Source: Ruditapes philippinarum
Lineage: Eukaryota
NCBI RefSeq assembly: GCF_026571515.1
Contig: NW_026860867.1
Span: forward strand, 1-64,000
DNA: 64,000 bases
Direction of reading: 5' to 3'
The notes under the pieces are model-generated. The model was not told where the DNA came from, searched no databases, and worked only from the letters and a program-made list of their open reading frames with translations. This document shows positions 1 through 37,700 of this stretch, piece after piece. Both the position numbers and the translations under genes were made by a program. Positions within the stretch are counted from its first letter, which is position 1, and each line of letters opens with the position of its first letter.

Positions 1-3000
1 TTGTACAACACCAACAACAAATCCACTTGCAGCCACAGCAATAAAACAAAGAACGCTAGAAATCCGCCTTCCAAACCTAACAATTGAACAATTAAATACA
101 TGTATTATATTTTCCACATAGATCTGTTAACGTCCTACATACATGAATTCTTAAGACTCAGATGTCAATGATACAGTTTATAAAGTGAATACCAACATTT
201 AAATGTTCCGATAACCCTTAGAAGGAAATATACAACGTTCATAAACAACTTGCGCTAAAATAGTTGGTAAATTTACCTCAGTTGTCTTTGCAACTCTTTA
301 TATACATATTCAATGAAGGCATGTCAACGGAATGCATTTGTATATTTGTATTTGAGAAAACTCCAAAACTTAATTTAATCTTTATAAATAACGATATGTT
401 TTATACACGGGAAGAAAATGTTTATCAAAGTTTTGGTCTCCAACCTGATTTGTAACCAGAGGGCGATGATCTTTGTAGGAATTCCTGCTATACTAAATAG
501 AAATAGGTTCAGATAGATGTTTCCTGAAAGAGCTTGAATGCCAAATGTTATTGCGTACAACACCATCCCTAATGCCAACCTGCAAAGAAATTTCATAACT
601 TTGATTACACTATAATTGCCATGCGGAGGTCTGTTGTTTAAATACAATCGCAGGTCTATCGCACCAGGTAGCATGGACAGTCTGAGACTGTGATTGCAAA
701 AATATGTGATGCTTAATGCATGGGGACTAGTTTTAAATGCCAATGTACACATCAATGCAGGATTATTTCAAACAACAAAATTAATCATATATTGCTTTTT
801 TCTCCCGGTGCACTTGTAAATGAGAAATGATGCAACATTTCTTGGATTAATGAACGAGCCTTTTTTTAAAAACATGTTAATACATTAAAGAGCTTTTACA
901 ATGAAAAAGATCAACATAAGTTAAACTTAATCGATCATTTGAAATAACAAAATTACAAGAGAAAAAACAGGATAATAAACATGCCAGTCAATAGCCAGTA
1001 AGAGAGTGATTTTTGTAAGTTCCTTTGACTTAAACAGGTGTATGAAAGTGTATTTCTTGTCCATCTCTTTGGTTGATTCTTTCTCAATTATAACTGTATT
1101 TCCAACTTCTGGTACAGGCTTATTGTTTATCTTTGCCCATCGTTCTATAATCTTTTGTGCATCGGCGGGACGGTCATGTGCAACAAACCAACGAAAGCTT
1201 TCTGGTATGACGCTATGAAATAATAAGTGATCACTGTCATTTAATAAATAATATAATAATAACATATTAATTTCACAATATGTATGAAATTTCTTGACGT
1301 TTGTTTTTCTTTGTCTAATTTTAAAACGTAACTGTTAAAAGATTTTTAAACAATCACTGGTATTAAAAAAGTAACAAATACAGCAGACAAAAAAGTATGA
1401 AACTATAATGTTGTGCTTCTAGAAGTACTGAGATGATAATTTTTTCTGATGTCTACACGCTCTTATGAATTATGAAAAACAAGATCAACAAGGAAAGGCG
1501 GCGTTCAATGAACGCAACCCCCATATGACCCAGCAACAAGAACCAATGGCAAGGAGCCCAGGCGGACCCCAAACATAAAAAGGACAGGGCAACGTGTCGT
1601 TAATCATTAAATGATAAATAATTTGTAACTGATTAGGAATTCAAAGAAATAATAATAGGCCCACAAAGGGGAAGGGGACAGGAGACCGGGGGAAGGGGGG
1701 CGGGTTAATCAAAGAAATAAAAACTAGAGGCAATGGGGAAGATACTTACCGTAGACGAGAAAACAACAAGGGACACAAGCAAAAGTGTCACCAAAACAGT
1801 ATGAAACAACATAGACATACATCTGAGGAACACAGTGGGGCGCCGCCTTGGAACGGTCAGCAGCATAATAATGACTGCTGGGGCGTTTAAACCGGTTAAT
1901 GGTGCACCAAACCTCGCTCTTAGCCCCACCATGTTCCTATAAACGAGACAGTGTATATAAAATGAATCCCCGCCAAGTGAAATTCTAACAGTTGTCATGG
2001 TTACAAAAGGTTAAATAAGTAAAACACTAAAATGATCATGTAGAAACATATAAAAGTAAACCCAATGACCATAACAAAAGTACTCAATGTCCTAAAGGAA
2101 GACAGAGCAACAAGAAAATCACCTACAAGGGCCCGACGAAGCAAGGCAGAAGACGAACATTAAGACAATTCAGTCCCAAAGGGCTTTACGAACTATCCAT
2201 CATAGAGTCTCCCACTTGGTCCGTCAGATGCAATCAAAAGAGGAAAGCGTAGTGTCCAACTGTAAAAGGGTTGAACACTAAACATGCAGTATGTCTTAAA
2301 ATAGTAGGGTCATAACCTCTTTTAATAAAACGTTTAATAATTTTAGTAAAAACAGCAGAAAAATTACCATGACCCAAAATCTTACGAAGTTTGTAAACCA
2401 CATCGCCATAAAAACCAGGCTGGCTAATCCCTTGTCGCAGAAGAGTTTTTAAATCACTATTGAATTTAGAAATTAAATCAAAGTTACGATTGTAAAATTT
2501 AGTAAAATATTTCCGTAATTTATGATAGCGGTAGCCCTGTTTTAGAAGCTTGCTGGTAATAAAAATATTCCGCTCGTTGAAATCCTTAACGTTGTTACAA
2601 GCTCTAGCGAATCTAATTAACTGAGATACATAAACCCCGTAGGATATTGCATGGGGTACGTCTCCATCCAAATGTGGATAATTAACTATACAAAAGTCAA
2701 AGTCATCTCTTTTATCATAAATTTTCGTGTGAATAGAATTGTTGTTGATAGTAATATGAAGATCCAAAAATGATGTACTAAAATTTCAAGAGTTCGTTTT
2801 ATTAAGTTGTAGTTCATTCGGATAAATGTCAGACACCATTTGATCAAAATAAGGATTATCTAAATTAAAAATATCATCAAGGTATCTGGAAGTAGTATTA
2901 AATGCGACTATAACATCTTGTTGTTTCTCTTCAGACAGACTCAACATAAAGTCTCTTTCATAGCAGTACAAAAACAAATCGGCGACCAGGGGTGCACAAT

Positions 3001-5522
3001 TAGTACCCATAGGAATTCCTATGATCTGTTTAAATAGGGTATTACCAAACCTGACATAAATGTTGTCGAAAAGAAAAGAGAGTGCTCTACAACTTCGTCA
3101 CAGGTCCACATAGTATAATGTTTAACAATACCGTTAGTAAAAAAAAGCTTTGTTCGAATTACATGCTAGAAAAGTAACTTTTTCCCGTGCAAAAGTTTTC
3201 TGAATTAGGGAAATTAATTTATCATTGATTAATTTATGTGGCAAGTTGTATAAAGTGTAGAAAAATCGTATGTACTGACAGTTGAAGCTTGAAAGTTATT
3301 AATTTTGAATTTATCCAAGATTTCACCAGAATTTTTAATTGACCAAAAGAGATGTTTGCCTGTGTTTTCATAGACTTTATCACAATATCTAATTACATGT
3401 GTTTTAATGGCAGTCAAACAAGACGTCAATAAAATAGAAAGTTTACTTGTAGTGCAAGATGTAGAATTAGCAATAAATCTGGCTTTGTAAGGTTTTTTAT
3501 GTAATTTAGGAATCCAATACATAATAGGAAGTTTGAGTTCTTTTTCATTAATTTGACTATGATATCGCCTTCTTATGCCGTAGTTTCCCCTTGCACATGC
3601 CCCAGAATAACAATTAAAGTAAATCAGAATTTTAAGAATCTGTATAAAGTAATTATGTTTGACATAAACATCAGTTTGGAATTTCCGACAAAATACTAAA
3701 ACCCTTACAATTTTAAGTTTCATAAAAAGCATGCTTTATTCGTTTTTTTTGTTTTCAACGCTCACGAGAATCTCCTATGAGAAAACAGTCATTACATTAG
3801 TGTTGCATTATATAGACACTGTTAGGGCCAGGTAGGTTATAAGCATTTCCGTTCAAAAAATTGTTCTTCGACTGACAACTTAAACTTCATTCTATATCAA
3901 ACATTTTGCAAAAACTAAAAACAAATAGCCCTGCATTATTACTTGGAGAACTAATTAGTGAGTGATATGTCTAAATATTACATTCTTTCGTAAAAACTAG
4001 TACAAAATGCTACAGAAACATATATGCATATATAATAAAGTAAGCTTTATAGTACTTTTAAACTACTTACAACCAAGTAAACAAGAATGGTATTCCTAGT
4101 AAACAACAAAATAATTGTATATAGCGCCAGTCTTTAATCAACCAGGACACAAGAGCCAGAGCGCACACTTGTAATGGCCAGGAAGGGAACCCTGTGATCC
4201 ACGGACGCCATTTTGCCGACATAAATTCGGATAAAATGCAATGCTGAACGCTGATGAAGTCTCCAGCACCAATACCGATGAAAAATCGCGAGACAGCAAA
4301 CATAATCCAGTTTGTAGACATAAAACCGATGAAATTGAAGACGACAACGATGATAATTCCGGCAAAGTACGGCCGTTTTCGTCCAAAGGTGTCCGAGAGT
4401 TGCCCGGCAACAAGACTTCCAACTAGCATACCAGACGCTTGTAGTGACATCACAGTGCTCGGTATGTAATCAAGGTCACATAACAGCTTGAACTGCAAAG
4501 CAAATAAGAATATTTTACATCTAACATTCAATGACATACATATTTTACTATGAAATACATCAATCGTTTCGATATACTGTTTAAAGTTACCGTATAAACC
4601 TCTATTAAGATATGATAACAAGATCAACAAAGAAAGGCGGCATTCAATGAACGCAACCCCCACACGACCCAGGAACAAGAACGAGCGGCAAGGAGCCAAG
4701 GCGGACCCCAAACAAGACCATCAAAAGGACGAATTGCTGGGTGATCTCAATTGTGGCTATTCTTATCTATGCTTATATATTTTGTGCTTATATATTTTGT
4801 GGCCATGGTCTATTTTTCTATTTGGAATGAACAAACAAAATGTATTATAACCCAAAGAACAAGCTAGGTGGTCCATATTCCGGATCATGTTTCCACTAAC
4901 ATAAAGAATAGAAAATTAAGTTCTTTTAACAATAATTTTGCATAAAACATGATTATATATTAACTCGTTTCTGAAATTTTTTTAAAAACCTGATATATTT
5001 TGTCAGTTTTTTATTTTTCATTTTATCAGCTTAATTATACATGAAATATATTTAATGAATAAAGAACTTATTATATTCGCCGTATATTAGTTGTTATACA
5101 TATATATCTAAACACTTAAAAAGATGGCAAAACTTGTTGTTATAATATGTTACATTCAAATAACATCAAATGCTTCATTTACAAATTTTATATTTAAGAT
5201 ATTAATTACATACCTCAGATACTGCTGTTCTCACACCAGAAAACTCAAATGTATCACATTTGGTTTTATTTAATATACATGCTTTCTCAGCGCACATGTT
5301 TGTACCATTGTCGTTTTCTGCACAGGAAGCAGTATTATTGCTCGATGTGCCATCAATACACCACCACTTTGGTGTAGCAGTCAACATTATCGTGCTCATC
5401 ACACTAAAACTTATCAGCGTCTTCGTCAGATGAACTGTGAAACCCATGTATTTTTGAAACCTGCCACATCCTCCAAGATTTTCAATTATTTCGTCAGGGC
5501 TTGTTGGTTTTGAAGCAGTCAT
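1..5522 (-). CDS. SLC22-family (Orct-like) organic ion transporter, gene A, 3'-truncated by window edge
   Basis: Coding exons 5522-5214, 4492-4071, 1212-985, 579-445, 76-<1. Exon sizes and phases match the paralogs (422 and 135 nt exons). Motifs: GGCGRFQ, SDTFGRKR, PESFRW, RFGRR. The exon 3 donor is GC rather than GT. Confidence 0.9.
1470..1571 (-). repeat. ~100-bp dispersed repeat (probable retroelement terminal segment) with GCGTTCA-N-TGAACGC inverted repeat, copy 1
   Basis: Closely similar copies at 4611-4712, 25680-25783 and 37599-37700. Confidence 0.8.
2149..2212 (-). promoter_or_regulatory. SECIS-like stem-loop (form 2) overlapping the retroelement stop codon; 3' GA of the core mutated to AA
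   Basis: Minus strand reads GGAGAC-TCT-ATGAT-GGATAGTTCG-T-AAA-GCCCTTTGGGAC-TGAATTGTCT-TAAT-GTTC-GTCTTC. This gives a 6-bp helix I, ATGA, a 10-bp helix II, AAA 12 nt after ATGA and an apical mini-stem. Confidence 0.65.
4611..4712 (-). repeat. ~100-bp dispersed repeat, copy 2 (gene A intron 1)
   Basis: AACAAGATCAACAA..GAAAGGCGG..TTCAATGAACGCAACCCC..GGCAAGGAGCC..GGCGGACCCCAAACA matches 1470-1571. Confidence 0.8.
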
Positions 5523-5884
5523 TTCTCCTACACGTAACAAAAAGATATTACATTCAAAGAAGATAAAACCTATGCAATATGTTTTTTGGTTTGAAAATGT
5601 GAAATACGCACAAACAAGTAGGAAAAACTTTCGAAAGTGTTAAAAACCCGTTAAAGCAAGTTGATTTTTATTAATCGACTAGAATGAATTCATATAACGT
5701 CTTAAACATATATGCAGTGCATATTACTGAATGAGGAATGAGAAGTATAAGAAGTTCTGTATTCTGTTTAAATTTATTGCTTTGAGAAATATATTTTAGT
5801 TTAAGATAATGCTATAACATATCTTTAAACATATAGAAAAAAATCTTAATATACTAATATAACTTTCACACACCTTTGGAGGTA

Positions 5885-6900
5885 AATAATAATAATAATA
5901 ATAATAATAATATCTTTATTTTAAGAAGATTACACATTAAGAACATACAATAACAATCATATATATCTAATTTCCAAAGTGGCCTTCTGAAATAGAAAAC
6001 AACAACAACAACAACAACAGGACATGCATATGTAGAAAATGAATGTATAATATGTAATTTTTAGAATAATACAACTCATATACTTTCGACAGGCACTCAA
6101 CAATTTTTGTTCAAACATATATGTACATTGCATCATTCGTTTGTTCGTTCATTCGTTCGTTCATATATTCATTCATTCATTCATTCATTCATTCATTCAT
6201 TCATTCATTCATTCATTCACTCACTCATTCATTCATATGAACATCAAGATATGCTTTGTATTTTTCTTTAAAACATTTAAGGTTATTAACATTACGAATA
6301 TTTAAAGGTATATAGTTCCAAATGTTCATGCCATAATAAGAAAATGTGTCTTTAATATAATTTGTTTTAGGTCTTGTCCATAATACAATATCTTTCCGTG
6401 ACCTAGATCTTAAGTTATATATTTTGTTGTCGGATAAAGTCATCAGTTCTGTCATATAAGTCGGTGCCATGTTATTTAAAGTTTTAAAAACAAGCACCAC
6501 CGTGTGGTATTTACATCTGTCAAGGAATGGTAACCAATTAAGAGTTTCGAATAGATTTGTTGACGGAGATCTTTGAAGTTGCTGTAAAATGATTTTAGCA
6601 ATTCGTTTTTGTAACTTACAAACATTATTTATGTAGTTTGTGTTTCCTTTACCCCATATAATACAACAATAGTCCATAATGGGCAATATATATGCATTGT
6701 AAAACAATAATTTCATATCAAAGTGCAAAAAATACGATATTTTTTCAATAAGGCAATTTTTCCGTTAAGTTTTTTACAAACATTGTCAATTTGCAAGTGC
6801 CATTTTAAGTTGTTATCTATGCAAATACCCAAGACTTTTTGATCAGTTACATTTTCAAGAGCTATTTCATTTATCTTAAGAATTAATTTTTTAAGTTTAT
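5885..6900 (-). mobile_element. 5'-truncated non-LTR retrotransposon (CR1/L2-like LINE) 3' end
   Basis: ORF 6225-6728 carries LINE RT C-terminal motifs (ILPIMDYCCIIWG, LQKRIAKII, LNWLP, APTYM, YNLRS, FSYYGMNIWNYIP). An upstream frameshifted segment reads KVLGICIDNNLKW. The 3' UTR has AATAAA and a (TTA)n tail at 5885-5911. Confidence 0.85.
6131..6235. repeat. (CATT)n/(CGTT)n microsatellite within the LINE 3' UTR
   Basis: Visible run of ATTC units. Confidence 0.95.
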
Positions 6901-7880: not shown

Positions 7881-8117
7881 TGAGCCGCGTCATAACAAAA
7901 CCAACATAATGCGTTCGTGACCAGCATGGATCCAGACTAGCCTGTGCATCCGCGCGGTCTGATCAGGATCCATGCTGTTCGCTATCAGTTTCACTACTTG
8001 TAATAGAGCTGGTAAGCGAACAGCATGGATCCTGATCAGACTGCGTGGATGCGCAGGCTGGTCTGGATCCATGCTGGTCCCAAACGCACTATGTTGGTTT
8101 TGTCATGGCGCGGCTCA
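7881..8117. mobile_element. Palindromic MITE, copy 2 (full length)
   Basis: ~100-bp inverted arms (CAAAACCAACATA..CCAGCATGGATCCAGAC..TCTGATCAGGATCCATGCTGTTCGCT) around a short spacer. Confidence 0.9.
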
Positions 8118-25679: not shown

Positions 25680-25783
25680 AGGTCCTCCTGGGATCCTTGC
25701 CGCAAGGTCTTGTTGCTGGGTCGTACGGAGGTTGTTGCGTTCATTGAACGCCGCCTTTCCTTGATGATCTTGTTTATCATATT
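25680..25783 (+). repeat. ~100-bp dispersed repeat, copy 3
   Basis: Reverse complement of 1470-1571 (TTGCGTTCATTGAACGCCGCCTTTCCTTG..GATCTTGTT). Confidence 0.75.
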
Positions 25784-27586
25784 TTGACTCTGAAAGCTAC
25801 ATTTCCTACCTTAATAGCACGCAATGTTTACCCCCCCCCCCCCAAAAAAAAAAAAAAAAAAAAAGGAAAAAAAAACTTAAGGATATTATAACATGTATAA
25901 TTCATAGTTAAGGAAACCTTAACATTTACTTTCGAAGCACAATGAAAAGCAATTATGACTAATTCTACCTTAAAATCTACATTTGAAAAAAGATATGGAT
26001 ACTGTATAAGCAAAAGTTTTATAAAAAAATAAAATAATAATGTTACTGTACCAGAAATACCAAACAAGGACGAGGTATGTAGAAGAAACACTTTATGGGT
26101 ATTTATAACTTTTCAAGAATATTTTATCATGATAATATTGTCATGAAAACAGACATTTTCTACTTCAAATTAAGTTTTAAAAAAGGACTTTGAATGTGTT
26201 TGGTACATCTTATATACAATCGCCGTCGTTCCAATCAATATTGTTTCTTTATTCCTGGTCTCCATAACTACAAGAAAACTTCAGGTACTGGTAATATTCT
26301 TCTATGCCATTAGAACTTTTCTGGTATTGTTGCAACAAGTCTTATCACTAACCTAGAAGATGTGGAGATCCGCCGTGTGCCACTGTCAGGAAATGCCTGT
26401 ATTGTGGAAACCTGAAAGGAAAAGTGTATTAATACTATTAATATGGATGCAATAATATTTCTCAAATTTATAAAACTAAAATAGCTCCCACATTATCTTC
26501 AATAACCGTGCTGATAATCATTTCTATGCGTTTGAAATGTATACTTAAAATATTTTGAAACGCTACCATGACATTGAAATGCATTACTAAAAAGCCCCTG
26601 GATCTGGAAATCAAGGTACAAAAGTGCTTAATATTAAACTAAAAGCAAACAAAGTATTATTTACAGGATCATTTCCTACATTTTTATTGTATGTGGGACT
26701 AAAGAGGATCCCGTCTTACTCTTATTTGATTACCGTGCATCACATGCCTCATCATCATTAATTTAACAGGCATATAAGAAGCAATTAATATTGTTTAAAA
26801 AGTCAGCTTATACGTATCAAGTGTTGCAACCACTGGACGCAGCTGTTTTGTGGCTGCTTCAAGACGTTTCATTGTTATCATCATAAACCTGATTCATAAA
26901 ATGCTCAAATTGTATTAAAAAGAATTCTGAAGATGGGATTGATGTGTGTTCGGGGAGATAACTCTACCAACACTCTGTTTAGATCCAGATATCAAAATCG
27001 TGTCATTGGGCCTATGTGATTTTTCCAACCATTGGGTGCACCTTAATTTTTGCACCAATGTCCGACGCCACAGCTAATTCATTTGTATGCATTGAAAACG
27101 TGAATCAATGGTTTCCCGGTATTTGTGAATGATTTAAATAAGAGTTTTCCTTTGATGAATAACCATTTAACTGTTTATATATATTTTTACTTTTTCTTTT
27201 TCATGTACTGTTTTGCAAAACAACCAGCTTTAACCCCCATCAAATCCCAGTAAGATATGAGAAAAACACCTAGCTTATAGGGCAAAGGTCAGTATTTTCA
27301 AAAACAAATTAAAAGAAGAACCGTCGTTGGCAAACAGACAAATATCCAAACCCCAGCTCGGCCCAGAAGTGGAACCATTACCTTTTGTAATAAATCTAAC
27401 TATCTTTCGACTCAATTATTTTCTACTTTACTAATCTTTGAAGTTTGTCAACCCCTGTCAACATCATGCTTTCTTTTAACGTTTTAAAGATATGATCCAT
27501 AACATAAACATATTGATATAATTGTGCTTTAATTAAATTGCTTGTTTTGTTAAAATCGGTCGGTTCTACCACAGACAGACATTTAT

Positions 27587-37598: not shown

Positions 37599-37700
37599 GG
37601 GTCCTCCTGGGCTCCCTGCGACTGGTTCTTGTTGCTGGGCCGTGTGCGTGTTGCGTTCATTGAACGCGCCTCTCCTTGTTGATCATGTTTATCATATTTT
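37599..37700 (+). repeat. ~100-bp dispersed repeat, copy 4
   Basis: Paralog of 25680-25783. Confidence 0.75.

What the first reader, a model, noticed from the sequence alone, without database searches (positions are those of the whole stretch)
2149..2788. Penelope-like retroelement whose RT ORF has in-frame UGAs and ends inside a SECIS hairpin (candidate selenoprotein-encoding Naiad)
Seen: ORFs 2786-3010 and 2234-2767 are in one frame, separated only by TGA (2788-2786, NKTNS*NFSTSFLDL). A second TGA (2236-2234) is followed in frame by LHLTDQVGDSMMDSS-TAA. The last codons fold as a form-2 SECIS: helix I GGAGAC/GTCTTC, ATGA at 2203-2200, helix II GGATAGTTCG/TGAATTGTCT (10 pairs including wobbles), apical AAA and a mini-stem. 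The only defect is TAAT instead of TGAT (position 2161). Established: Naiad PLEs have a C-terminal RT, and some in clams and spiders encode selenoproteins (Craig et al. 2021). Inference: this is a decayed copy of a SECIS-bearing family. Caveats: the copy has frameshifts, the cysteines are ordinary TGT/TGC, the first TGA could be TCA>TGA, and the second could come from compensating indels in F-D-C.
Basis: partly seen in the sequence, partly recalled or inferred. Interest (0 to 1): 0.85.

Follow-up and report, generated by a model that had tools for sequence, protein, structure and literature searches.

The report
Selenocysteine-coding Naiad retroelement, odd SECIS core
This is a truncated copy of a very abundant jumping gene (a Naiad-type Penelope-like retroelement) whose protein is written with UGA "stop" codons read as selenocysteine. 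That kind of element was described in clams in 2021, but here the RNA hairpin that should direct the recoding lacks a base held to be invariant, in about 1,600 copies.

Summary
On the minus strand, TGA 2788-2786 joins two RT reading frames. TGA 2236-2234 and TAA 2188-2186 end the frame. Bases 2211-2150 match Rfam SECIS_1 at 33.0 bits (cut-off 35, E 0.0015), and the 3' core reads UAAU.

The window copy (3555 to about 1467) is a 5'-truncated member of a family of about 3.9 kb, 98.5% identical to intact copies.

- A full-length copy (L031) has one frame with six TGAs and no other stop.
- Four of the TGAs sit on cysteines that are invariant in 8 of 8 Cys-type homologues. These have an N-terminal GIY-YIG domain, a CxC linker and a C-terminal RT, which is the Naiad architecture.
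- Eleven contigs of related families from marine metagenomes (eight distinct hairpin sequences) carry the same hairpin, with strong covariation and a canonical GA.

The interpretation therefore stands, and this kind of element is already published (Craig et al. 2021).

The correction is that A2161 is not a private defect. Genome-wide, 1587 copies read TAAT and 12 read TGAT, across subfamilies whose ORFs diverged under purifying selection (dN/dS 0.12). Among the young copies sampled, all but two TAAT-bearing, shared variants are 18 synonymous to 1 non-synonymous.

The most likely reading is a working SECIS with a non-canonical A•A core. That part is inferred, not shown.

The scan's first-stage readers noted this family on other pieces of this genome.

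The parts
1467..3555 (-). 5'-truncated copy of the retroelement: the RT C-terminal two thirds plus the whole 3' UTR. It lies in an intron of an MFS/SLC22-like transporter gene, in the same orientation.
   Evidence: Aligns 98.5% to the full-length copy L031 from window 3555 to 1466. The 3' end was defined by 30 or more copies that diverge after ...GATCTTGTTTTTCATATTT. Host exon: Pfam Sugar_tr/MFS_1.
2789..3555 (-). RT core (PKLHK…, DFSTLYT, IPMGTNCAPL, RYLDD). Three ±1 T indels at window 3242, 3139 and 3090 break the frame.
   Evidence: The same homopolymer sites vary by ±1 in other copies, so assembly error is possible.
2786..2788 (-). In-frame TGA 'U5' at a variable, non-Cys site of RT motif 6(D).
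   Evidence: TGA in 33 of 34 copies and TCA in one. Related families have Ser, Leu or another sense residue here.
2237..2785 (-). C-terminal RT/thumb part of the ORF (183 codons).
   Evidence: It has 65-81% amino-acid identity to 11 metagenome relatives.
2234..2236 (-). TGA 'U6', 22 nt before the Rfam hairpin. It is the probable real terminator, being too close to the SECIS to be recoded.
   Evidence: Homologous proteins end here. Copies show TGA 37, TAA 2 and AGA 2. Craig et al. describe the same layout for Naiad-Mmer.
2186..2188 (-). TAA, the first non-UGA stop. It overlaps the apical AAA of the hairpin.
2150..2211 (-). Form-2 SECIS hairpin with ATGA 2203-2200, apical AAA 2187-2185 and 3' core TAAT 2162-2159 (A2161 where G is expected).
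   Evidence: Rfam RF00031 33.0 bits, E 0.0015. Homologous hairpins in related families show covariation: 92.2% of cells paired against 73.3% in shuffles, 0/500.
1467..2149 (-). Rest of the 3' UTR up to the element's 3' end.
   Evidence: It holds no second SECIS candidate.
4599..4714 (-). Separate fragment of about 115 nt from the 3' tail of a related copy, in the neighbouring intron.
   Evidence: 89.7% identical to the last 116 nt of L031's element.

Best explanation
Window 3555-1467 (minus strand) is a young, 5'-truncated copy of a Naiad-type Penelope-like retroelement of about 3.9 kb.

The family's single ORF runs GIY-YIG endonuclease, CxC linker, then reverse transcriptase. It is written with five internal UGA codons and ends at a sixth:
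- U1, the first Cys of the CCHH finger;
- U2, the Cys before the GIY-YIG motif;
- U3, the first Cys of CxC;
- U4, the Cys eight residues after DKA;
- U5, a variable site in RT motif 6;
- U6, the terminal UGA, which lies too close to the hairpin to be recoded.

The hairpin at 2211-2150 is the element's own SECIS. On the element's mRNA it would recruit SBP2, EFsec and Sec-tRNA so that the upstream UGAs are read as selenocysteine. The window copy carries only U5, U6 and the SECIS.

In this genome the SECIS core reads AUGA/UAAU, not AUGA/UGAU. That puts an A•A pair at the k-turn's 2b•2n position. This is the family's state, not a lesion of this copy. Lineages carrying it kept a protein-constrained ORF and multiplied to about 1,600 copies or more, so the variant hairpin most likely still works.

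Shown here: the architecture, the fixed UGAs at Cys sites, the conserved and covarying hairpin, the family-wide A, and purifying selection.
Inferred: that Sec is inserted, and that the UAAU core is competent (my odds about 0.6).
For: Family and copy
- More than 2,600 candidate copies; the best 40 are 99-100% identical over 701 nt.
- The common 3' end and varied 5' truncation points are typical of target-primed reverse transcription.
- The 5' end is sharp at L031:4777 in 39 of 39 other hits, with at least 177 candidates.

Reading frame
- Full-length copy L031 has one frame of about 1,050 codons with six TGAs and no TAA or TAG.
- The TGAs are fixed across copies, including subfamilies only 81-88% identical.
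- U1 to U4 align to Cys in 8 of 8 full-length homologues. Seven of the eight carry Pfam GIY-YIG at the N terminus and five have weak RVT_1 matches further C-terminal.

Hairpin
- Rfam SECIS_1 at 33.0 bits is the only hit in the element. A pattern scan of the 3' region finds no other candidate.
- The six best SECIS_1 hits in the whole 1.4-Gb genome (39.6-41.6 bits) are all copies of this hairpin that happen to carry G.
- Related families at 65-81% amino-acid identity (11 contigs, L054-L064) carry the hairpin at the same place with a canonical GA by eye. Ten of them match SECIS_1.
- On the alignment of nine hairpins (window, one C-type copy and seven relatives), 9 of 10 helix II pairs show double changes. 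The covariation score is 0.699 against 0.344 in shuffles (0/500), and versions with partners slid by 1-3 columns score at most 0.197. RNAalifold predicts the same fold.

Family-wide A
- Exact 17-mers: TAAT 1587, TGAT 12.
- Control A>G changes at neighbouring As: 3 and 5 copies.
- An old subfamily (ORF about 79% identical) also reads 14 TAAT to 2 TGAT.

Selection downstream of the UGAs
- L031 against the C-type copy L037: dN/dS 0.12 with dS 0.33 over 446 codons.
- Among 33 young T-type copies (31 read TAAT; L036 and L039 read TGAT), variants shared by two or more copies are 18 synonymous to 1 non-synonymous. Singletons are 47 to 60. P is at most 1e-9 against the neutral expectation of 21-28% synonymous; Fisher 2.5e-5.
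- 22 of 31 young copies have no frameshift or new stop.

Precedent
- A natural k-turn with A at 2n still folds and binds an L7Ae protein (PMC3985660).
- SBP2 and L30 are L7Ae-family proteins (PMC3706390).
Against: - The 3' GA of the quartet is described as invariable in eukaryotic SECIS elements (PMC2647825). Mutations in the GA tandem abolish L30 binding (PMC3706390).
- SECISearch3 would discard this hairpin outright (PMC3753652). The window hairpin is 2 bits under Rfam's cut-off.
- No expression, ribosome or selenium data could be obtained.
- Within the family, helix II shows no strict compensatory change, and about 20% of copies carry an A•C mismatch.
- Pfam gives no direct GIY-YIG or RVT_1 hit on this family's own ORF pieces. 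Membership rests on alignment to homologues.
- No in-frame AUG lies between the element's 5' end and the first UGA.
- The selection tests use about 30 copies chosen for similarity to the window, all compared through one reference copy.
Confidence: 0.75

Rival explanations
1. It is the same Sec-type Naiad, but the UAAU hairpin is dead. The family's ORF would stop at the first UGA, and copies would be made in trans by other Naiads (Cys-type, or the rare G-bearing lineages). The A spread because it is neutral for a parasitised RNA.
For: The 3' GA is held to be invariable, and GA-tandem mutations abolish L30 binding. All eight distinct related hairpins seen elsewhere keep GA. C-type TGAT copies (7) exceed the control A>G counts (0-1), which hints that G was ancestral in old lineages.
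Against: RNAs mobilised in trans should lose ORF constraint. Yet variants shared among the young copies (31 of 33 read UAAU) are 18 synonymous to 1 non-synonymous. Subfamilies in which UAAU is the majority state differ with dN/dS 0.12-0.25. G-bearing masters would hand G on to their copies, but 99% carry A. The G copies held are scattered and several are otherwise broken (AUAA, AUGA deleted, no AAA).
Confidence: 0.18
2. The UGAs are passed by a route that does not need the hairpin's core. Examples are near-cognate or Cys insertion at UGA, or A-to-I editing of A2161 in the transcript.
For: It would reconcile ORF constraint with a non-canonical core. The site lies next to a long helix. The rare genomic G copies could be taken as cDNAs of edited RNA (0.75%).
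Against: The G frequency matches ordinary A>G change at neighbouring sites for the young subfamily (5 against 2-5). The rest of the SECIS (AUGA, AAA, both helices) stays conserved at 6-9% divergence where third codon positions differ by 18-41%, which argues that the hairpin is in use. From my own knowledge of the pair geometry, inosine would lack the guanine N2 amino group that the sheared A•G pair uses, so it would offer no more than A; the Kt-23 paper reports only that A•A keeps a single hydrogen bond. Five successive near-cognate readthroughs would be very inefficient.
Confidence: 0.05
3. Null reading: a decayed RT pseudogene with chance stop codons next to a chance hairpin.
For: Hairpin stability is not unusual (z -0.55). 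The window copy has frameshifts.
Against: All in-frame stops of an intact copy of about 1,050 codons are TGA, and four sit on invariant Cys sites. The hairpin is conserved with covariation across families. Rfam E is 0.0015.
Confidence: 0.01

Closest known systems
Naiad-Mmer and Naiad-Scon, selenoprotein-encoding Naiad PLEs of the clams Mercenaria mercenaria and Sinonovacula constricta (Craig et al. 2021, PMC8557442)
   Same: N-terminal GIY-YIG, CxC linker and C-terminal RT. UGAs at the first CCHH Cys, at the Cys before GIY-YIG and at DKA+8, plus one in RT6(D) as in Naiad-Scon. The SECIS lies directly at the ORF end. As in Naiad-Mmer, a UGA sits just upstream of the SECIS and the first non-UGA stop lies inside it.
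   Different: This family has five internal UGAs (the published families have three or four), including the first Cys of the CxC motif. The published consensus SECIS elements were SECISearch3 'grade A', which requires the GA-AG core. This family's hairpin reads UAAU in about 99% of copies. The species of this genome is not known to me, so identity with a published family cannot be excluded outright.
Canonical eukaryotic SECIS, form 2 (Rfam RF00031; core UGAN/KGAW)
   Same: AUGA 5' core, 12 nt to the apical AAA, a helix II of 10 pairs, a mini-stem, helix I, and a position in the 3' UTR after the recoded UGAs.
   Different: The G of the 3' GA is A. The score is 33.0 against a cut-off of 35; the same hairpin with G scores 41.6.
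Kt-23 k-turn of Thelohania solenopsae (A at position 2n; Huang & Lilley 2014, PMC3985660)
   Same: The same substitution in the same place of a G•A/A•G k-turn (A•A at 2b•2n). It still adopts a k-turn and binds an L7Ae-family protein.
   Different: It is a ribosomal RNA element bound by L7Ae, not a SECIS bound by SBP2. The mapping of SECIS core positions onto 1b/1n and 2b/2n is my inference.
Toxoplasma and Neospora SelT SECIS with a GGA/GA core (cited in PMC2647825)
   Same: A natural SECIS that departs from the 'invariable' quartet.
   Different: The change there is on the 5' strand (U to G). The 3' GA is kept.
Selenoprotein P
   Same: Several UGA-Sec codons are decoded on one mRNA; bivalve SelP has very many (cited in PMC8557442).
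   Different: It is a host gene with canonical SECIS elements, not a mobile element.

Membership tests
Naiad clade of Penelope-like elements | GIY-YIG endonuclease N-terminal to the RT in one ORF | tested here: met
   In L031 the frame runs …YVLT-U…YVGQT…R…H…E..WI..L.T..P.GLN… and then the RT. It aligns to homologues of 915-1105 aa. Seven of eight carry Pfam GIY-YIG at residues ~50-200, and five have weak RVT_1 matches at ~550-810. Pfam does not hit this family's own pieces directly. The window copy lacks this part because it is 5'-truncated.
Naiad clade of Penelope-like elements | Linker with a CxC motif between EN and RT, and Zn-finger-like CX2-5CxxC and CCHH motifs in EN | tested here: met
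   U-D-C aligns with the CxC motif of 8 of 8 homologues. KCNSKRCGCC and U1…U2…H…H align with the fingers. The presence of the CCHH motif argues against Chlamys.
Naiad clade of Penelope-like elements | PLE-type RT motifs (DKA, PKxHK, YxDD) | tested here: met
   PADKAANN, IPKLHKKPYKARFIA and RYLDD. There are 14,886 homologues at E<=1e-3. A PDB sequence search gave nothing useful. No labelled phylogeny could be built.
Naiad clade of Penelope-like elements | Tandem or inverted arrays (pseudo-LTRs), and no canonical hammerhead ribozyme | tested here: inconclusive
   Head-to-tail and inverted neighbours occur on contigs C4632, C581, C148 and C1241, but most 5' flanks are unrelated. No ribozyme family reaches E<=10.
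Selenoprotein-encoding Naiads (Craig et al. 2021) | In-frame UGAs at conserved Cys positions in an otherwise open frame | tested here: met
   Six TGAs and no TAA or TAG in L031. The TGAs are fixed in copies. U1 to U4 fall on Cys in 8 of 8 homologues. Related families swap Cys and UGA at U1 and U3.
Selenoprotein-encoding Naiads (Craig et al. 2021) | High-confidence SECIS at the ORF end or in the 3' UTR | tested here: inconclusive
   The hairpin has the right place, shape and covariation. The GA-AG core that SECISearch3 requires is absent in 1587 of 1599 copies.
Selenoprotein-encoding Naiads (Craig et al. 2021) | Sec is actually inserted | not testable with these tools
   The only indirect support is purifying selection downstream of four or five UGAs.
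Eukaryotic SECIS (Rfam RF00031) | Score at or above the gathering cut-off of 35 bits | tested here: not met
   Window and L031 score 33.0 bits. Rare G-bearing copies score 39.6-41.6. Relatives score 26.6-38.8.
Eukaryotic SECIS (Rfam RF00031) | Quartet UGAN/KGAW with tandem G•A and A•G pairs | tested here: not met
   The 5' AUGA is present, but the 3' strand reads UAAU. This is the family-wide state.
Eukaryotic SECIS (Rfam RF00031) | Unpaired AA(A) 11-12 nt after the core, a helix II of about 10 pairs or more, and helix I | tested here: met

The most novel reading that the evidence does not exclude
This would be a natural eukaryotic SECIS that lacks the 'invariable' G of the 3' GA (an A•A pair at the k-turn's 2b•2n position) and yet supports processive decoding of five UGA-Sec codons. 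It would do so in a retrotransposon lineage that outgrew its canonical relatives to about 1,600 copies or more. Standard selenoprotein pipelines, which filter on GA-AG, would be blind to such elements and to any host genes that have captured them.
Probability: 0.55. Interest if true: 0.8.

Novelty: new variant of a known kind. Interest (0 to 1): 0.6.

Why it matters
Selenoprotein-encoding transposons have been known only since 2021, from four families. This genome adds a much larger one, and metagenome contigs add eight distinct relatives, together showing that Cys and Sec swap freely at several sites (2 to 6 UGAs per family).

The sharper point is the SECIS core. The 3' GA is the one feature that every prediction tool takes as fixed. 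Here a lineage without it shows every evolutionary sign of still being translated.

If the UAAU hairpin works, the rule for SBP2 recognition is looser than assumed, at least in this animal. SECIS searches that filter on GA-AG would then miss real elements. A simple reporter pair (natural A against natural G allele) would measure the cost of the substitution.

If it does not work, the family is a rare, datable case of a retroelement that lost its own translation and kept spreading.

Either way, about 1,600 SECIS-like hairpins scattered through introns and UTRs are raw material for new host selenoproteins, and a nuisance for annotation.

Tried and rejected
- Pfam on the window's and on L031's ORF pieces gave no RVT_1 or GIY-YIG hit. 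Identity came from homologues instead.
- A PDB sequence search gave nothing useful.
- Folding energy against shuffles was not informative.
- A second, canonical SECIS was sought elsewhere in the element with Rfam at E<=10 and with my own pattern scan. None was found.
- The idea that the G-bearing copies are the functional masters was rejected. They are 12 of 1599, scattered over subfamilies, and several are broken elsewhere. For the young subfamily they are no more frequent than control A>G changes.
- Covariation inside the family: there is too little variation and no strict compensatory pair. Covariation was shown across related families instead.
- My own covariance model, run on 80 metagenome loci, found the hairpin only in the relatives at 65% amino-acid identity or more.

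Tools that could not be used:
- One pattern was too long.

None of these was retried by another route. The species was not identified.

No family consensus was built.
Full report
**1. Observation**

On the minus strand the frame 3010-2789 continues, after TGA 2788-2786, into 2785-2237. Then come TGA 2236-2234, fifteen codons and TAA 2188-2186.

Rfam's SECIS_1 model matches 2211-2150 end to end at 33.0 bits (cut-off 35). E is 0.0015 for a 9-kb scan of both strands against all 4227 families, and the 3' core reads UAAU. Stability alone is ordinary (z -0.55).

**2. What the copy is**

The 701 bases around the finding occur in more than 2,600 candidate places in this 1.4-Gb assembly, and the best 40 are 99-100% identical.

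- Copies share one 3' end (…GATCTTGTTTTTCATATTT, window about 1467) and stop at different 5' points, the mark of target-primed reverse transcription.
- The window copy runs from 3555 to 1467. It is 98.5% identical to a full-length copy (L031).
- It differs in its ORF by three ±1 T indels at homopolymers that also vary in other copies, so they may be assembly errors.
- It sits in an intron of an MFS/SLC22-like transporter gene, in the same orientation.
- Full-length copies are about 3.9 kb, with a sharply defined 5' end: 39 of 39 other hits start at the same base, and there are at least 177 candidates.

**3. The reading frame**

In L031 one frame of about 1,050 codons is open from the 5' end. 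It contains six TGAs and no TAA or TAG. Across the copies held, the six sites read TGA in 3/3, 3/3, 7/7, 11/11, 33/34 and 37/41, including copies only 81-88% identical.

A search of 1.8 billion representative proteins gave 14,886 homologues. The full-length ones (915-1105 aa) have Pfam GIY-YIG near the N terminus (seven of eight) and weak RVT_1 matches further on (five of eight). Aligned to them:

- U1 falls on the first Cys of the CCHH finger;
- U2 on the Cys before the GIY-YIG motif;
- U3 on the first Cys of the CxC linker;
- U4 on the Cys eight residues after DKA.

Each of these is Cys in 8 of 8 homologues. U5 is a variable site in RT motif 6, and U6 lies where the homologues end.

This is the Naiad architecture and the pattern that Craig et al. 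(PMC8557442) described for clam Naiads. The published clam families carry U1, U2 and U4, plus an RT6(D) UGA in Naiad-Scon. In Naiad-Mmer a UGA lies just before a SECIS that overlaps the first non-UGA stop. The present family adds the CxC site.

**4. The hairpin is a real, conserved SECIS homologue**

A scan of metagenome contigs with the C-terminal ORF piece gave 80 loci. The eleven at 65-81% amino-acid identity (L054-L064, eight distinct hairpin sequences) all carry a hairpin at the same place, directly after the ORF. Rfam SECIS_1 scores ten of them at 26.6-38.8 bits. Every one has a canonical 3' GA.

I aligned the window hairpin, one C-type copy from this genome and seven of these relatives (alignment A2). 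On that alignment:

- 92.2% of cells pair, against 73.3 ± 2.3% in shuffles (0/500);
- the covariation score is 0.699 against 0.344 (0/500);
- versions with partners slid by 1-3 columns reach at most 52.6% paired and a score of 0.197;
- 9 of 10 helix II pairs and 3 of 7 helix I pairs show changes on both sides;
- RNAalifold predicts the same fold on its own.

The 5' UGA, the apical AAA and the A-U that follows the key position on the 3' strand are invariant. The only departure in the core is the window family's A.

These relatives also carry in-frame UGAs, always at U2 and U4 where the contig reaches them. At U1 and U3 they have either Cys or UGA, and one has a UGA in the CX2-5CxxC finger. More distant relatives (about 50% identity) end in TAA and have no such hairpin.

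**5. The A at 2161 is the family's state**

All young copies first fetched read TAAT. The six best SECIS_1 hits in the whole genome (39.6-41.6 bits) turned out to be copies of this very hairpin that carry G, which at first suggested a canonical family with a mutated subfamily.

Exact pattern counts say otherwise. ACTGAATTGYCTT-A-ATG occurs 1587 times and the G form 12 times, with no hits for the reversed controls.

- The A form covers both main subfamilies: about 80% GUCU and 20% GCCU among the listed places.
- The G copies are scattered, and several are broken elsewhere (AUAA, AUGA deleted, no AAA).
- A>G at two neighbouring As occurs in 3 and 5 copies. So the five young G copies are ordinary mutation, while the seven older C-type ones are a mild excess that may be ancestral remnants.
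- An old subfamily whose ORF is only about 79% identical reads 14 A to 2 G.

The G>A change is therefore old within this genome's family. Because every related family elsewhere keeps G, the A state is derived.

**6. Is the variant hairpin in use?**

No other SECIS candidate exists in the element. The ORF downstream of four or five UGAs has stayed under purifying selection in lineages that carry A:

- L031 against a C-type copy gives dN/dS 0.12 (dS 0.33, 446 codons), and older comparisons give 0.10-0.40.
- Among 33 young copies (31 read TAAT; L036 and L039 carry G), variants shared by two or more copies are 18 synonymous to 1 non-synonymous, and the one exception is a CpG change. Singletons are 47 to 60.
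- The neutral expectation is 21-28% synonymous, which gives P of at most 1e-9. Shared against singleton variants give Fisher P 2.5e-5.
- The hairpin differs by 6-9% where third codon positions differ by 18-41%.
- 22 of 31 young copies have no frameshift or new stop.

This is what a cis-preferring, self-translating element shows. It is not what an RNA copied in trans would show.

A structural precedent exists. Kt-23 of Thelohania solenopsae has A at the same k-turn position (2n), keeps the A2b-N6 to A2n-N3 bond, and binds L7Ae (PMC3985660). SBP2 and L30 belong to that protein family (PMC3706390).

Against this stand three points from the literature:

- mutations in the GA tandem abolish L30 binding;
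- SECISearch3 discards anything without a GA-AG core (PMC3753652).

I could get no reads, so expression and the RNA letter at 2161 are untested. I put the odds that the UAAU hairpin is competent at about 0.6.

**7. Verdict**

The new points are:

- the size of the family;
- five internal Sec codons, including the CxC site;
- a family-wide non-canonical SECIS core with evolutionary evidence of continued use.

The scan's first-stage readers noted the same family on other pieces of this genome.

Limits:
- the species is unknown to me;
- the copies analysed were chosen by similarity to the window;
- no labelled PLE phylogeny was possible;

Noticed in passing
L031:4398-4777 (minus strand); no counterpart in the window copy: No in-frame AUG lies between the element's sharply defined 5' end and the first UGA. 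The first Met comes after U2. Related families (L058, L064) have a Met about 10-15 codons upstream of the matching point. Where translation starts is open.
   Followed up: partly
window 4599-4714 (-), 25681-25784 (+), 37599-37699 (+): Three isolated fragments of about 100-117 nt, 87-90% identical to the last ~100 nt of the element. They are either extreme 5' truncations or a SINE-like repeat that shares the Naiad 3' tail.
   Followed up: no
L054-L064 (metagenome contigs): Related Sec-type Naiads differ in which cysteines are UGA. L058 has U1, U2 and U4; L059 has U2 and U4; L060 has U2, U3 and U4. L064 has U1 to U4 plus one in the CX2-5CxxC finger, as reported for spider Naiads. Cys and Sec seem to swap often.
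   Followed up: partly
window 3242, 3139, 3090, 1649; the same sites in L034, L024, L025, L007: All indels of the window copy are ±1 T in T runs, and the same runs vary in other copies. These may be homopolymer errors of the assembly rather than real frameshifts.
   Followed up: partly
window 375-620, 930-1215, 4070-4500, 5202-5540 (minus strand): Exons of an MFS/SLC22-like transporter (Pfam Sugar_tr and MFS_1 on the 4070-4495 exon). The retroelement lies in one of its introns in the same orientation.
   Followed up: partly
G000 contigs C581, C4632, C148, C1241, C1329: Several copies lie head to tail at 4.1-4.7 kb spacing, or inverted next to copies of the other subfamily. This fits the complex tandem/inverted arrays described for PLEs.
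   Followed up: no
window 7939-8059: A long, near-perfect inverted repeat gives sub-threshold microRNA-family hits (mir-589 at 29 bits against 54.8). It looks like a foldback or MITE-type repeat.
   Followed up: no
window 6225-6728 (-): A 167-aa ORF (…LNWLPFLDRCKYH…) that looks like the C-terminal tail of a non-LTR retrotransposon RT. It is another, unrelated retroelement remnant.
   Followed up: no
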